A stretch of DNA of 64,000 nt, taken from Macrostomum lignano (Eukaryota). Position 1 is the first letter of the stretch. Each line of letters starts with the position of its first letter. Shown in pieces: positions 4,801 through 10,800 of the stretch. The stretch is from positions 186,001-250,000 of the forward strand of contig NIVC01001256.1 of the NCBI GenBank assembly GCA_002269645.1. Direction: 5' to 3'. Both the position numbers and the translations under genes were made by a program. The notes under the pieces are model-generated. The model had not been told where the DNA came from and searched no databases. It saw only the letters and a program-made list of their open reading frames with translations.

Positions 4801-7800
4801 GATTGTTAAGGAGAAATTGGAAATATTGGAAACAGTCCTTCAGTAGCCCGCTACCCTCTCTCCACCCGGTCCTTCAGTAGGCCGCTACCCTCTCTCCCCG
4901 GTCCTTCAGTAGGCCGCTACCCTCTCTCCCCGGTCCTTCAGTAGGCCGCTACCCTCTCCCCCCCGGTCCTTCAGTAGGCCGCTACCCTCTCCCCGGTCCT
5001 TCAGTAGCCCGCTACCCTCTCCCCCCCGGTCCTTCAGTAGGCCGCTACCCTCTCCCCGGTCCTTCAGTAGCCCGCTACCCTCTCCCCCCGGTCCTTCAGT
5101 AGCCCGCTGCCCTCTCCCCTCGGTCCTTCAGTAGGCCGCTACCCACTGCCTCCAGTCCTTCAGTAGACAGCTACCCTCTCCCCCCGGTCCTTCAGTAGGC
5201 CGCTACCCTCTCTCCCCGGTCCTTCAGTAGGCCGCTACCCTCTCTCCCCGGTCCTTCAGTAGGCCGCTACCCTCTCCCCCCGGTCCTTCAGTAGGCCGCT
5301 ACCCTCTCTACCCGGTCCTTCAGTAGCCCGCTACCCTCTCCCCCCGGTCCTTCAGTAGGCCGCTACCCTCTCCCCCCGGTCCTTCAGTAGCCCGCTACCC
5401 TCTCTCCACCCGGTCCTTCAGTAGGCCGCTACCCTCTCTCCACCCGGTCCTTCAGTAGACCGCTACCCTCTCTCCCCGGTCCTTCAGTAGGCCGCTACCC
5501 TCTCTCCACCCGGTCCTTCAGTAGACAGCTACCCTCTCCCCCAGGTCCTTCCATGGTTATTCCAGCCCTATCAACAGACCTCAATTAACAAATTGCCATG
5601 ATGAAGGAACTGGTGCAATCGAGATGGATAGAAACGTGGAATAAAAATGGAACAATAGCAAGGTAAAAGAAGTGTTTAGAAGGCTAACTGATAAGAGTAG
5701 GCACCAGACGTATTGCTAAAAACTTCAGAACAGATTCGTGCATCATGAGTGCTGCTCTGGCAGCAACTAAAATTCTGGCGGGAAGGCGCGACTCAAAGTA
5801 GCTGGAGGCGCCCGCGACGCCACGCCGAGGCCACGCGCGCACGGAACGTACCAAACCAGGCGGCCTGCTCGCCCTGCACCTCAATGGCCAGGCCGAAATC
5901 GGCCAGCTTGACGGCGGCGCCTTTGGCTTTGCTGGCGAGCAGCAGGTTCTCCGGCTGGAGGGAGCGGCAGCGATAGAGAGTGGGGGAGAGGCGGAGAGAG
6001 GAGAGCGGTAGGAATGTAAATCTCTGGGCTTCCTGCGGGCGGAAACCTCAGGTGGAAAATTTTTCTTTAACAATTGTGTCCGCAAATGAGCTGTTCTTTC
6101 TTCTATATATACTCATAAAACTGGTGACACAGTCATGACACACTGGTGACACAGTCATGACACACAGGTGACACAGTCATGACACACTGGTGACGCAGTC
6201 ATGACACACTGGTGACACAGTCACGACACACTGGTGACACAGTCACGACACACTGGTGACACAGTCATGACACACTGGTGACACAGTCATGACACACTGG
6301 TGACACAGTCATGACACACTGGTGACACAGTCATGACACACAGGTGACAGTCATGACACACTGGTGACGCAGTCATGACACACTGGTGACACAGTCATGA
6401 CACACTGGTGACACAGTCATGACACACTGGTGACACAGTCATGACACACTGGTGACACAGTCATGACACACAGGTGACAGTCATGACACACTGGTGACGC
6501 AGTCATGACACACTGGTGACGCAGTCATGACACACTGGTGACGCAGTCATGACACACTGGTGACACAGTCATGACACACTGGTGACACAGTCATGACACA
6601 CTGGTGACACAGTCATGACACACTGGTGACACAGTCATGACACACTGGTGACACAGTCATGACACACAGGTGACAGTCATGACACACAGGTGACACAGTC
6701 ATGACACACTGGTGACGCAGTCATGACACACTGGTGACACAGTCATGACACACTGGTGACGCAGTCATGACACGCAGGTGACACAGTCATGACACACTGG
6801 TGACGCAGTCATGACACACTGGTGACACAGTCATGACACACAGGTGACACAGTCATGACACACAGGTGACACAGTCATGACACACTGGTGACGCAGTCAT
6901 GACACACTGGTGACACAGTCATGACACACTGGTGACGCAGTCATGACACACAGGTGATGCAGTCATGACAGACAGGTGACACAGTCATGACACACTGGTG
7001 ACGCAGTCATGACACACAGGTGACGCAGTCATGACACGCAGGTGACACAATCATGACACACTGGTGACGCAGTCATGACACACAGGTGACAGTCATGACA
7101 CACTGGTGACACAGTCATGACACACAGGTGACAGTCATGACACACTGGTGACGCAGTCATGACACACAGGTGACGCAGTCATGACACACTGGTGACGCAG
7201 TCATGACACACTGGTGACACAGTCATGACACACTGGTGACACAGTCATGACACACAGGTGACACAGTCATGACACACTGGTGACACAGTCATGACACACT
7301 GGTGACGCAGTCATGACACACAGGTGACAGTCATGACACACTGGTGACGCAGTCATGACACTATTACCGCTCAATTAAATGCAGACAAAAGTTTCAAGCG
7401 AAATTCTCCCCCTCTGCAGTGAAAGCTGTACGCTCGTTGGAAGCTGGAAAAATGAAATAAATACTGAAAATATTCCCTTATTCAAACGCGACAGTTGAAA
7501 AATAATTATGGAATCAACGCAAATGCAGCATTGTGTGCTAATTATCTAATCGAAGCTCCTTATTGCAACATCCCCAGCCTGGCCTGTCATACAAACCTAC
7601 AATTGAGCTTCGCAATGTTTAGCGCTCAAAATCAAATCAAATTACTGCACAAATCGCTGATAGCAGCCCTCGGCCTCATCAATATTGATAATTATTGAAT
7701 AGACATTAGGAAAGCTCACGCGTAAAGGACTGTTACTTGATTGTTTTTATTGATAAAAAGCGAACAAACAAAACAGGAAATTTATTGCGGTAAGCGGCAG

Positions 7801-10800
7801 GGGGGCAGTCAACCAGCTAGCGAGAGGGCAGTAGGCCGATTAACCCAAATTGAACTCATAATATGTTATTATAGAATCGAATATTAATAATTATTATGCA
7901 TAATTGTTAGAGAAAAATGCAAAGCAAACACACCGAGGGAAACAAACGGATTAGTGCGTGCGTGACAATCGATAATAAAGTTAGGCTGACTAAATCAGTG
8001 GCAGTAAAATCTGATGAGAATAATAAAAATTCTGACAGCCAACAGCAGGGGAATTGCACCTGGGAGCAGCTACAACAGGGGAATTGCACCTGGGAGCAGC
8101 TACAACAGGGGAATTGCACCTGGGAGCAGCTACAGCAGGGGAATTGCACCTGAGAGCAGCTACAACAGGGGAATTGCACCTGGGAGCAGCTACAACAGGG
8201 GAATTGCACCTGGGAGCAGCTACAGCAGGGGAATTGCACCTGAGAGCAGCTACAGCAGGGGAATTGCATCTGGGAGCAGCTACAGCAGGGGAATTGCATC
8301 TGGGAGCAGCTACAGCAGGGGAATTGCACCTGGGAGCAGCTACAGCAGGGGAATTGCATCTGGGAGCAGCTACAGCAGGGGAATTGCACCTGAGAGCAGC
8401 TACAGCAGGGGAATTGCATCTGGGAGCAGCTACAGCAGGGGGATTGCACCTGGGAGCAGCTACAGCAGGGGAATTGCACCTGAGAGCTACTACAGCAGGG
8501 GAATTGCATCTGGGAGCAGCTACAGCAGGGGAATTGCATCTGGGAGCAGCTACAGCAGGGGAATTGCACCTGGGAGCAGCTACAGCAGGGAAATTGCACC
8601 TGAGAGCTACTACAGCAGGGGAATTGCATCTGGGAGCAGCTACAGCAGGGGAATTGCATCTGGGAGCAGCTACAGCAGGGGAATTGCATCTGGGAGCAGC
8701 TACAGCAGGGGAATTGCACCTGGGAGCAGCTACAGCAGGGGAATTGCACCTGGGAGCAGCTACAGCAGGGGAATTGCATCTGGGAGCTACTACAGCAGGG
8801 GAATTGCATCTGGGAGCAGCTACAGCAGGGGAATTGCATCTGGGAGCAGCTACAGCAGGGGAATTGCACCTGGGAGCAGCTACAGCAGGGGAATTGCACC
8901 TGAGAGCTACTACAGCAGGGGAATTGCATCTGGGAGCAGCTACAGCAGGGGAATTGCATCTGGGAGCAGCTACAGCAGGGGAATTGCATCTGGGAGCAGC
9001 TACAGCAGGGGAATTGCATCTGGGAGCAGCTACAGCAGGGGAATTGCATCTGGGAGCAGCTACAGCGGGGGAATTGCACCTGGGAGCAGCTACAGCAGGG
9101 GAATTGCACCTGAGAGCTACTACAGCAGGGGAATTGCATCTGGGAGCAGCTACAGCAGGGGAATTGCATCTGGGAGCAGCTACAGCAGGGGAATTGCATC
9201 TGGGAGCAGCTACAGCAGGGGAATTGCATCTGGGAGCAGCTACAGCAGGGGAATTGCACCTGGGAGCAGCTACAGCAGGGGAATTGCACCTGGGAGCAGC
9301 TACAGCAGGGGAATTGCACCTGGGAGCAGCTACAACAGGGGAATTGCATCTGGGAGCAGCTACAGCAGGGGAATTGCACCTGGGAGCAGCTACAACAGGG
9401 GAATTGCATCTGGGAGCAGCTACAGCAGGGGAATTGCACCTGAGAGCTACTACAGCAGGGGAATTGTACCTGGGAGCAGCTACAGCAGGGGAATTGCATC
9501 TGGGAGCAGCTACAGCAGGGGAATTGCACCTGGGAGCAGCTACAGCAGGGGAATTGCATCTGGGAGCAGCTACAGCAGGGGAATTGCACCTGGGAGCAGC
9601 TACAGCAGGGGAATTGCATCTGGGAGCAGCTACAACAGGGGAATTGCATCTGGGAGCAGCTACAGCAGGGGAATTGCACCTGGGAGCAGCTACAGCAGGG
9701 GAATTGCACCTGGGAGCAGCTACAGCAGGGGAATTGCATCTGGGAGCAGCTACAGCAGGGGAATTGCACCTGGGAGCAGCTACAGCAGGGGAATTGCACC
9801 TGGGAGCAGCTACAACAGGGGAATTGCATCTGGGAGCAGCTACAGCAGGGGAATTGCACCTGGGAGCAGCTACAGCAGGGGAATTGCATCTGGGAGCAGC
9901 TACAGCAGGGGAATTGCACCTGGGAGCAGCTACAGCAGGGGAATTGCATCTGGGAGCAGCTACAGCAGGGGAATTGCATCTGGGAGCAGCTACAGCAGGG
10001 GAATTGCACCTGGGAGCAGCTACAGCAAGGGAATTGCACCTGGGAGCAGATAACCCGATAAAAACGCTTGCTAGAGTCAGAAAGGAGTCCCAGATTCTCG
10101 GTTCTCTGAGACGCTCTGAGAATTCCAGATCGAGTCTAACCAGCGAGTTTATCGAGCAAAGCAGCCCAAATCATATGCATGGCAAGTGACAGCCAAGAAC
10201 ACAGATAGCCAGCAAACCGAGAGAAACACAATTACAAGTATATTGAAGAGGAATTTTTAAAAATGAAGCAAAATTTTCGCGACTCGGGGGGGGGGCACGC
10301 GAAACGCACCGAACCACGCCGAGGACTGGTCGGGCTGCAGCTCGATGGCCAGGCCAAAGTCGGCCAGCTTAACCACCGCGCCCTTTGTTTTGCTGGCGAG
10401 CAGCAGATTCTCCGGCTGCATTTATGTTTTTTATTGCATCATTAATTTTGTTTGTAGCGGAGCTTACGTCATCAAAATTGGGTACAGCAGAATATTGTAA
10501 CAGACAAAACACTGCAGGTACAACTACTAGCAAAATGCTAAAATAAGAGACTGAGGCACAGACAGGCTAAATAATAAAACAGGACACACGAAAGCAAACA
10601 GCACTACTTAGTTGTCAGTAGTTTGGTGCAACGCGGGATTATCTTTCAATATGAGGTATCAAATAGTTTTCAACTAAAACGCGCTAGAAAACGATGCACT
10701 CCCCCCCACCACCCGAATTCCTGAGCAGTTTGGCCGTACTTGAGAACCAAGCGCGTGACAAAGAAGGCATTAGAAGTGGTATTTAAAAACTGTCGCCAGT

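What the first reader, a model, noticed from the sequence alone, without database searches (positions are those of the whole stretch)
5852..10415. Duplicated, obligately mutually exclusive exon encoding the CaMKII DFG motif and activation segment
Seen: between the HRDLK exon (ends phase 0) and the FAGTPGY exon (starts phase 1) lie two intact homologous exons, A (10310-10415, 106 nt) and B (5852-5954, 103 nt), both AG/GT flanked, phase 0 to 1, stop-free, and diverged mostly at synonymous sites outside the loop. Including both (209 nt) or neither breaks the frame, so exactly one must be used. B is canonical ([12 protein letters not shown]); A changes the activation segment to [13 protein letters not shown] (one residue longer, adds Pro and two Ser) and has KTKGAVV for KAKGAAV. 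Established: CaMKII isoform diversity is mainly ascribed to the linker, and its activation loop is not normally phospho-regulated. Inference: this gene can swap part of the catalytic core by splicing, possibly altering substrate specificity or adding phosphorylatable residues. The two Ser lie 4-5 residues upstream of the CaMKI T177-equivalent position, so they do not simply recreate that site. I do not recall this arrangement being described but cannot check the literature.
Basis: partly seen in the sequence, partly recalled or inferred. Interest (0 to 1): 0.85.

Follow-up and report, generated by a model that had tools for sequence, protein, structure and literature searches.

The report
Flatworm CaMKII alternative activation-loop exons
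A CaMKII gene of the flatworm Macrostomum lignano carries two tandem, mutually exclusive versions of the exon encoding the DFG motif and the first half of the activation loop, which is a new example of a known way of diversifying kinases, not a new mechanism.

Summary
The window holds a Macrostomum lignano CaMKII gene on the minus strand. Two homologous exons lie between the HRDLK exon and the FAGTPGY exon: A (10415-10310, 106 nt) and B (5954-5852, 103 nt). Both are AG/GT flanked and phase 0 to 1. A alone or B alone keeps the frame; both together, or neither, gives an early stop.

New evidence:
- The GenBank gene models, which are built only from RNA-seq, use the non-canonical exon A in all three near-identical copies of this gene.
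- An old paralog (synonymous sites near saturation) has the same A'-then-B' pair, and its model uses B'.
- All four exons are intact and under purifying selection (A-A' pN 0.10 vs pS 0.87; B-B' pN 0.013 vs pS 0.47).
- A-type exons share Thr, Leu, Pro-Asp, one extra residue and a GTGCGT donor. The two serines are not conserved.

Use of both exons within a single gene is inferred from this constraint. It is not shown by reads.

The kind is known. Human and mouse CAMK2D, and molluscs, alternate the adjacent HRD exon (6A/6B), and JNKs also have kinase-core alternative exons. I found no report of a DFG-exon pair in CaMKII. Verdict: real, new member of a known kind, moderate interest.

The parts
15393..15465 (-). 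Constitutive exon E5 (…[24 protein letters not shown]). It ends in phase 0 with a consensus donor, AAG|gtgagt.
10310..10415 (-). Exon A, 106 nt, phase 0 to 1: [35 protein letters not shown](G). This is the non-canonical version (V148, L160, P162, one extra residue). It is the version used in the RNA-seq-derived gene models.
10304..10309 (-). 5' splice site of exon A, GTGCGT (non-consensus C at +4). It is identical in the paralog's A' exon.
10416..10440 (-). 3' splice region of exon A. It is A-rich with a poor pyrimidine tract (…gatgcaataaaaaacataaatgcag).
5852..5954 (-). Exon B, 103 nt, phase 0 to 1: [34 protein letters not shown](G). This is the canonical version, with the loop length seen in 280 of 293 CaMKII-like sequences. 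It is skipped in the annotated transcripts of this gene but is strongly conserved against the paralog's B'.
5846..5851 (-). 5' splice site of exon B, GTACGT (non-consensus C at +4). It is identical in the paralog's B' exon.
5955..6005 (-). 3' splice region of exon B. It is a long CU-rich pyrimidine tract (…ctctcctctctccgcctctcccccactctctatcgctgccgctccctccag).
4039..4122 (-). Constitutive exon E7 ((G)[28 protein letters not shown]). It starts in phase 1.
1824..28477 (-). In-window part of the CaMKII gene, covering residues 1-298 of P0121. The ATG is at 28477. Exons: E1 28477-28425, E2 19088-18934, E3 16741-16687, E4 16606-16541, E5, A or B, E7, E8 3941-3847, E9 3294-3172, E10 3093-3010, E11 1866-1824. 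The linker and hub exons lie beyond the window start.
8042..10049 (.). A 30-nt-period minisatellite (about 67 copies) that fills about half of the 4.3-kb A-B intron. This is context only, with no evidence of a role in exon choice.

Best explanation
This is a tandem-duplicated, mutually exclusive exon pair in a Macrostomum lignano CaMKII gene. The exon encoding the catalytic-loop Asn, strands beta6-beta7, the DFG motif, beta9 and the first half of the activation loop was duplicated before an old gene duplication. The upstream copy (A-type) then diverged.

Shown:
- Each mRNA must carry exactly one copy, because 106+103 nt or 0 nt shifts the frame into an early stop.
- Exon A is the form in the RNA-seq-derived models of this gene, and B' is the form in the paralog's model.
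- All four exons have stayed open, kept canonical splice sites and evolved under purifying selection.

Inferred:
- Both exons are used in both genes, with opposite default choices, and are probably chosen in a cell-type-specific way.
- Exclusivity is enforced mainly by the reading frame, with nonsense-mediated decay removing double-inclusion and double-skip products.
- Choice is set by trans-acting factors acting on conserved weak donors (GT[G/A]CGT).
- At the protein level both isoforms keep every catalytic residue. The A form replaces three otherwise 90%-or-more conserved residues (A148V, V160L, G162P) and lengthens the activation loop by one residue. It therefore most likely tunes activation-loop conformation, kinetics or docking rather than switching activity on or off.
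For: - Exon anatomy and frame logic.
- Organism and gene: P0121 (M. lignano BOX15_Mlig005291g1; Pkinase plus CaMKII association domain) is 100% identical to the A splice.
- RNA support: two further gene copies also use A. The GenBank annotation comes only from StringTie/TACO RNA-seq assemblies and de novo transcripts, run with isoform-frac 0.75, so only major isoforms survive (PMC5730564).
- Paralog: locus L001 has A' (15660-15765, 106 nt) then B' (17528-17630, 103 nt), both AG/GT flanked. Its model P0122 uses B'.
- Selection: constitutive exons between the paralogs give pS 0.68 and pN 0.026. A-A' gives pS 0.87 and pN 0.098. B-B' gives pS 0.47 and pN 0.013. If one lineage had evolved neutrally, so few non-synonymous changes would be unlikely: P=1.7e-4 for A-A' and 1.4e-4 for B-B'. 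Changes by codon position are [6,4,20] and [0,1,12].
- Shared derived A-type characters (T10, L26, P28, D29, one extra residue) and type-specific donors.
- Copy number: exactly two copies per gene and no decayed third copy.
- Composition: all four exons are GC-rich islands compared with their flanking introns.
- Replaced residues: A148, V160 and G162 are 90% or more conserved in 35 bilaterian CaMKIIs.
Against: - No transcript or read was available that shows B spliced into this gene or A' spliced cleanly into the paralog. The only model containing A' (P0192) is an aberrant prediction that also contains part of B'.
- No A-type exon was found in any other species: about 330 CaMKII-like proteins and a metagenome DNA scan. 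The databases hold few flatworms.
- At the nucleotide level A is closer to B (82%) than to A' (72%). GC3 bias explains this (A 0.86, B 0.85, A' 0.46), but gene conversion or independent duplication is not strictly excluded.
- No conserved intronic regulatory element or RNA pairing was found, so how the choice is made is unknown.
- The functional effect on the kinase is untested. The AlphaFold models were unusable.
Confidence: 0.72

Rival explanations
1. Isoform separation between paralogs without current alternative splicing. After the gene duplication this gene became fixed on exon A and the paralog on exon B'. Under this reading, exon B here and A' there are unused relics that are always skipped.
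For: Every transcript-derived model of this gene (3 copies) has A only, and the paralog's model has B' only. This evolutionary outcome is documented for homologous alternative exons after gene duplication (PMC4494069).
Against: The supposedly unused exons show no decay. Paralog synonymous sites are near saturation (pS 0.68). Even so, B differs from B' by 1 non-synonymous and 12 synonymous changes, and A' keeps its frame, both splice sites and pN 0.10 against pS 0.87. The annotation pipeline discarded isoforms below 75% of the major one, so the absence of minor isoforms from the annotation says little.
Confidence: 0.15
2. One of the two exons serves mainly as a regulatory 'poison' element. Including it together with the other exon, or skipping both, produces a frameshifted transcript that is degraded, and this sets CaMKII dosage. 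On this view the exon does not mainly encode a distinct protein isoform.
For: A+B and skip-both products both carry early stops upstream of many exon junctions. All four alternative exons have weak, non-consensus donors.
Against: A poison exon needs no protein-level conservation, yet substitutions fall overwhelmingly at third codon positions and the catalytic residues (Asn, DFG, WF) are intact in all four exons. This role could coexist with the main explanation.
Confidence: 0.06
3. The A-type exons arose independently in the two paralogs, or were homogenised by gene conversion. In that case the pair is younger than the gene duplication, and the A-A' comparison overstates long-term constraint.
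For: A is closer to B than to A' at the nucleotide level (82% vs 72%).
Against: The closeness lies at third positions and follows gene-wide GC3 (0.78 vs 0.57). A and A' share two rare states, Pro replacing a 90%-or-more conserved Gly and a one-residue insertion. They also share Thr, Leu, the same upstream position in the pair and the same GTGCGT donor. B-B' shows no sign of recent conversion (pS 0.47).
Confidence: 0.06
4. Assembly or haplotype artefact: two alleles of a single exon were placed in tandem by mis-assembly of a redundant, polyploid genome.
For: The Mlig_3_7 assembly is known to be redundant (PMC5730564).
Against: The same A-then-B order occurs on three separate scaffolds: the window, L002 (all exons identical) and the old paralog L001, whose introns are entirely different. 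A and B differ by 19 substitutions and an indel, and their flanks are unrelated. RNA-derived models splice A cleanly.
Confidence: 0.01

Closest known systems
Vertebrate CAMK2D mutually exclusive exons 6A/6B, and the equivalent alternative exon in molluscan CaMKII genes
   Same: Human: [24 protein letters not shown] vs [24 protein letters not shown], 73 nt (PMC5740500 supplement; PMC9741552). Mouse: 6B makes up about 10% of transcripts and only in olfactory bulb (PMC12060085). Haliotis, Physella, Octopus, Nucella and Aplysia isoforms alternate the same exon.
   Different: It is the neighbouring upstream exon (helix alpha-E plus the HRD catalytic loop), not the DFG/activation-loop exon. Macrostomum has only one HRD exon. 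None of the vertebrate or mollusc sequences examined shows an alternative version of the DFG exon; a Gigantopelta model carries only an extra degenerate partial copy. The flatworm pair is therefore an independent duplication at a different position.
JNK (MAPK8/9/10) mutually exclusive exons 6a/6b
   Same: These are homologous alternative exons inside a Ser/Thr kinase domain. They were kept in all paralogs after ancient gene duplications and are thought to alter substrate or partner affinity (PMC4494069). This parallels the retention of the A/B pair in both Macrostomum paralogs.
   Different: Different kinase family, and a different region of the C-lobe that is not the DFG motif or activation loop. 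Expression of both JNK isoforms is documented experimentally, whereas here it is inferred.
CaMKII variable-linker alternative splicing
   Same: It is the classical source of CaMKII isoform diversity. It also operates in Macrostomum: P0242 and P0121 differ by a 31-aa linker insert.
   Different: Linker exons are cassette exons in a disordered region between the kinase and hub domains. They are not homologous either/or exons, and they do not change the catalytic core.
Insect mutually exclusive exon clusters controlled by competing RNA pairing (Dscam1 exon 6, 14-3-3 xi; from my own knowledge)
   Same: Tandem homologous exons of which exactly one is chosen.
   Different: Those clusters rely on conserved docking and selector sequences in the introns. 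No conserved intronic block or shared inverted-repeat architecture was found between the two paralogs here. Here the reading frame itself enforces exclusivity.

Membership tests
CaMKII (CAMK2) gene | Ser/Thr kinase domain with HRDLKPEN and DFG, followed by an autoinhibitory/CaM-binding segment (RQET…[22 protein letters not shown]) and a C-terminal association (hub) domain | tested here: met
   P0121 is 100% identical to the window's spliced product and carries Pfam PF00069 plus PF08332 (CaMKII_AD). It is 85% or more identical to solved CaMKII delta, gamma and alpha structures. The regulatory segment is encoded in window exons E10-E11.
Tandem-duplicated mutually exclusive exons | Two adjacent homologous exons of similar length with the same entry and exit phase and functional splice sites | tested here: met
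   106 and 103 nt, both phase 0 to 1, both AG…GT. There are 27 identical residues across the 35-column alignment.
Tandem-duplicated mutually exclusive exons | Joint inclusion or joint skipping is non-productive | tested here: met
   A+B gives a stop at codon 175, inside exon B. Skipping both gives a stop 13 codons into E7.
Tandem-duplicated mutually exclusive exons | Both exon copies are maintained by purifying selection | tested here: met
   A-A' pN/pS is 0.098/0.867 and B-B' is 0.013/0.471, against 0.026/0.676 for constitutive exons. Binomial P is about 1e-4 even if only one lineage were neutral.
Tandem-duplicated mutually exclusive exons | Transcripts from the same gene contain one exon or the other, and never both | not testable with these tools
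   Only major-isoform, RNA-derived models are available: A in this gene (3 copies) and B' in the paralog. No raw reads or minor isoforms could be examined. Three protein searches found no B-containing product of this gene.
RNA-pairing (docking/selector) controlled exon cluster | Conserved complementary intronic elements: one docking site that pairs with a selector next to each variant exon | tested here: inconclusive
   No intronic block is conserved between the paralogs. The window has one weak 20-nt, 85% inverted repeat (5949-5968 / 11719-11738) with no counterpart in L001. Without orthologous introns from related species this test is weak.
Vertebrate/mollusc CaMKII exon 6A/6B alternative pair | The duplicated exon is the alpha-E/HRD exon (…QQILE…HRDLK, 73 nt) | tested here: not met
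   The window and L001 each have a single HRD exon. The duplicated exon here is the next one downstream.

The most novel reading that the evidence does not exclude
Macrostomum, and perhaps a wider group of flatworms, maintains two alternative activation segments for CaMKII. The unusual version, one residue longer and with Pro replacing a near-invariant Gly, is the predominant isoform of one paralog. On this reading the catalytic core of CaMKII, usually treated as invariant and not regulated through its activation loop, is tuned by cell-type-specific splicing into enzymes with distinct kinetics, autoinhibition or docking. Together with the separate HRD-exon pair of vertebrates and molluscs, this would mean kinase-core exon swapping evolved at least twice in CaMKII.
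Probability: 0.4. Interest if true: 0.55.

Novelty: new member of a known kind. Interest (0 to 1): 0.42.

Why it matters
CaMKII isoform diversity is normally discussed in terms of the linker. Catalytic-core exon swapping has only recently been noticed, in CAMK2D exons 6A/6B, and its function there is still unknown.

A second, independent case at the adjacent DFG/activation-loop exon has been kept in two old paralogs, and the divergent form is the major transcript in one of them. This suggests that tuning the CaMKII catalytic core by splicing is a recurrent solution.

It also offers a natural pair of activation-loop variants (Gly to Pro plus one extra residue) for testing what this loop contributes in a kinase that does not need activation-loop phosphorylation. 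M. lignano is a transgenic model, so exon-specific reporters or knock-outs are feasible.

The significance is incremental rather than conceptual.

Tried and rejected
1. Three protein-database searches (a 121-aa, a 295-aa and a 73-aa query centred on exon A) for A-type exons in other species, or for fragments of this gene carrying B. None was found. Only M. lignano carries IELQPD.
2. A degenerate DNA scan of metagenome contigs for [11 protein letters not shown] gave 0 hits.
3. Comparison with the near-identical second copy L002. All exons are identical, but unique intron flanks differ by only 0.5-2.3%, so this says nothing about selection.
4. Search for conserved intronic elements, shared motifs (Rbfox, PTB, MBNL, Nova, CELF) or inverted repeats that could act as docking or selector sites. 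Nothing is shared between the paralogs. One weak inverted repeat at B's acceptor is probably chance.
5. AlphaFold2 models of the A-type protein (P0121) and the B-type paralog (P0122) with 35-sequence alignments. Mean pLDDT was about 51 and the C-lobe was below 50, so they were discarded.
6. Search for a third or decayed copy of the exon in the window and in L001. There is none.
7. Literature searches for a CaMKII, or any kinase, mutually exclusive exon covering the DFG motif or activation loop. None was found in the held library.
8. My first dN/dS baseline used mis-registered exon blocks. I redid it by mapping codons through the proteins.

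
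Full report
**Observation.** On the minus strand the window encodes the kinase and regulatory part of a CaMKII gene. tblastn with human CaMKII-alpha lays out exons from 19.1 kb down to 1.8 kb, and the ATG is at 28477. The exon ending …HRDLK|gtgagt (15465-15393, phase 0) and the exon starting (G)FAGTPGY (4122-4039, phase 1) are separated by about 11 kb. Two homologous exons lie in that interval. A is 10415-10310 (106 nt) and B is 5954-5852 (103 nt). Both follow an AG and precede a GT, and both run from phase 0 to phase 1. Splicing in silico shows that A-only and B-only are open. A+B gives a stop 59 codons after the HRDLK exon, and skipping both gives a stop 13 codons into the next exon. There are exactly two copies and no third or decayed one.

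**Identity and RNA support.** A 295-aa query made from the A splice matches Macrostomum lignano protein PAA70243 (P0121, BOX15_Mlig005291g1) at 100% identity. P0121 has a kinase domain plus the CaMKII association domain. Its 90% cluster holds two more M. lignano gene copies on other scaffolds (P0241, P0242), and both also contain exon A.

The GenBank annotation of this assembly was built only from RNA-seq: StringTie and TACO assemblies, mapped de novo transcripts and TransDecoder. TACO was run with --isoform-frac 0.75 (PMC5730564). Inclusion of A, with B skipped, is therefore supported by transcripts and is the major form in whole-animal RNA. The same setting means minor isoforms would have been dropped. 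So the exon that looks non-canonical is the predominant one in this gene.

**The paralog.** A second M. lignano CaMKII (P0122, 94% identical over the kinase region) uses a B-type exon (…[10 protein letters not shown]). An aberrant UniProt model of that gene (P0192) contains an A-type exon followed by part of the B-type exon.

I fetched the locus (L001, NIVC01001526.1). It has the same layout: E5', then A' (15660-15765, 106 nt, [35 protein letters not shown]), then B' (17528-17630, 103 nt), then E7'. All have AG/GT sites. The introns of the two genes share no alignable sequence. This rules out an assembly or haplotype artefact. A third scaffold (L002) repeats the window's arrangement with every exon identical. 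It is too recent a copy (about 1% divergence in unique intron sequence) to say anything about selection.

**Selection.** Across 262 constitutive codons the two paralogs give pS 0.68 and pN 0.026, so the duplication is old and synonymous sites are near saturation.
- A against A' gives pS 0.87 and pN 0.098.
- B against B' gives pS 0.47 and pN 0.013.
- Differences fall mostly on third codon positions: [6,4,20] for A-A' and [0,1,12] for B-B'.
- Suppose only the exon missing from the annotation had drifted neutrally. So few non-synonymous changes would still be improbable: P=1.7e-4 for A' and 1.4e-4 for B.
- All four exons are GC-rich islands compared with their flanking introns.

I conclude that all four exons are translated often enough to be held by purifying selection. 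The A-type evolves about four times faster than constitutive exons. Its changes are concentrated in the four residues before the conserved Trp (QSSA vs LAND).

**Origin.** A and A' share derived states that are absent from B, from B' and from the other CaMKII-like sequences examined:
- Thr in KTKG.
- Leu-Gln-Pro-Asp in place of Val-Gln-Gly-Glu/Asp.
- One extra loop residue.
- The upstream position in the pair.
- The donor GTGCGT, where B and B' have GTACGT.

In 35 diverse bilaterian CaMKIIs the positions A148, V160 and G162 are 90% or more conserved. The A-type has Leu160 and Pro162, and this gene's A also has Val148. At the nucleotide level A is closer to B than to A'. That similarity lies in saturated third positions and follows each gene's GC3: A 0.86, B 0.85, A' 0.46, B' 0.62, against gene averages of 0.78 and 0.57. 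A single duplication before the gene duplication is the most parsimonious reading. Gene conversion or convergence is not strictly excluded.

**Mechanism.**
- Inferred: aberrant products are removed by nonsense-mediated decay.

Steric exclusion does not apply, because the A-B intron is 4.3 kb here and 1.8 kb in the paralog. Incompatible splice-site classes do not apply either, because all sites are GT-AG. I found no conserved intronic element, shared splicing-factor motif or common inverted-repeat architecture in the two paralogs. One 20-nt, 85% complementary pair joins B's acceptor to the intron upstream of A. It has no counterpart in the paralog and is probably chance.

The only conserved non-coding feature is the donor, which is type-specific and non-consensus (C at +4) in all four alternative exons. 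Most constitutive donors are GTGAG. Here A has a poor, A-rich acceptor tract yet is the included exon, while B has a long CU-rich tract yet is skipped. This suggests active regulation, for example repression of B, rather than choice by splice-site strength. That step is speculation.

**Protein consequences.** By alignment to solved CaMKII structures and standard kinase anatomy, the exon encodes the catalytic-loop PEN, beta6, the beta6-beta7 turn, beta7, DFG, beta9 and the activation loop up to the Gly at the CaMKI Thr177-equivalent position. The catalytic Asn, DFG and the Trp-Phe anchor are unchanged in all versions, so both isoforms should be active. The differences are one residue in the beta6-beta7 turn, one in beta7 (this gene only), and the Val-to-Leu and Gly-to-Pro changes plus the insertion at the start of the activation loop. 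A change in loop conformation or dynamics, affecting kinetics, autoinhibition or docking, is the most reasonable inference, but it is untested. The AlphaFold models were too poor to help.

**Comparison with what is known.** Kinase-core alternative exons in CaMKII are not new.
- Human CAMK2D has a validated pair for the adjacent upstream exon: [24 protein letters not shown] vs [24 protein letters not shown] (Hatje 2017 supplement). Martinez-Gomez 2022 list the event and date it to Chordata.
- In mouse these are exons 6A and 6B, with 6B at about 10% of transcripts and only in olfactory bulb (PMC12060085).
- In my hit list, Haliotis, Physella, Octopus, Nucella and Aplysia isoforms alternate that same HRD exon.
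- JNK genes keep kinase-domain alternative exons in all paralogs (PMC4494069).

None of these involves the DFG/activation-loop exon. Seven literature searches found no description of such a pair in CaMKII or any other kinase, but the library is not exhaustive. Macrostomum has a single HRD exon. The flatworm pair is therefore an independent instance of a known mechanism, at a new position in the same gene family.

**Verdict.** The feature is real and correctly described. The either/or interpretation is well supported by sequence logic, partial RNA evidence and strong evolutionary constraint. Alternation within one gene and any functional difference remain to be shown. It is a new member of a known kind and of moderate interest.

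Noticed in passing
window 1973-2916, 4835-5551, 6120-7361, 8042-10049, 12690-14692, 17379-17796, 18069-18707, 20929-22157, 43612-44733, 51333-55543, 59044-60259: The window is packed with long minisatellite arrays of 21-34-nt (one of 68-nt) period, several inside CaMKII introns. Three lie between the HRDLK exon and E7. The arrays align in many shifted registers between the window and the near-identical copy L002, which makes the introns look more diverged (about 94-96% identity) than their unique flanks (about 99%).
   Followed up: partly
proteins P0127/P0128 vs P0184 (Haliotis), P0130 vs P0197 (Physella), P0185 vs P0211 (Octopus), P0124 (Nucella), P0196 (Aplysia): Molluscan CaMKII genes alternate the alpha-E/HRD exon (…SVNYCHLHGIVHRDLK vs …GVNHCHQNHVIHRDLK), the same exon as vertebrate CAMK2D 6A/6B. 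The Nucella model includes both in tandem. This pair may therefore be older than the 'Chordata' age given in PMC9741552, or it may have arisen more than once.
   Followed up: partly
protein P0123 (Gigantopelta aegis isoform X3): This model has an extra in-frame 25-aa degenerate partial copy of the DFG exon (PENLILASKAGSPAVKLADFDLDCE, with DFD instead of DFG) inserted before the normal exon. It looks like an independent partial duplication of the same exon in a gastropod, probably non-functional or a prediction artefact.
   Followed up: no
proteins P0121 vs P0242 (copies of the window gene); the region lies beyond the window start: The two copies' models differ by a 31-aa insert in the variable linker (VNCFNATLTSSGTVVKSDVCAGGGGGGGNET) and by a small difference after NFS. 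Ordinary CaMKII linker splicing therefore also occurs in Macrostomum.
   Followed up: no
window 36286-37263 (+), 46603-47445 (+), 47985-48620 (+), 55777-58527 (-): Other coding-looking stretches lie upstream of the CaMKII gene: a DEAD-box helicase fragment (DDX19/Dbp5-like, with the …[13 protein letters not shown] motif), a coiled-coil ORF, an EF-hand-like ORF, and a 916-aa low-complexity ORF with a run of about 70 threonines. None was examined further.
   Followed up: no
proteins P0082, P0091, P0092, P0267, P0268, P0293, P0321, P0326 (unnamed ENA/Logan/JGI sequences): A minority of CaMKII-like sequences from unidentified organisms also have a 12-residue spacer between DFGLA and G[FY]AGTP (for example VELEHGSEPAWY, IELEKSTEFGWY). 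A one-residue-longer activation loop is therefore tolerated elsewhere in the family. Their taxonomy and gene structure are unknown.
   Followed up: no
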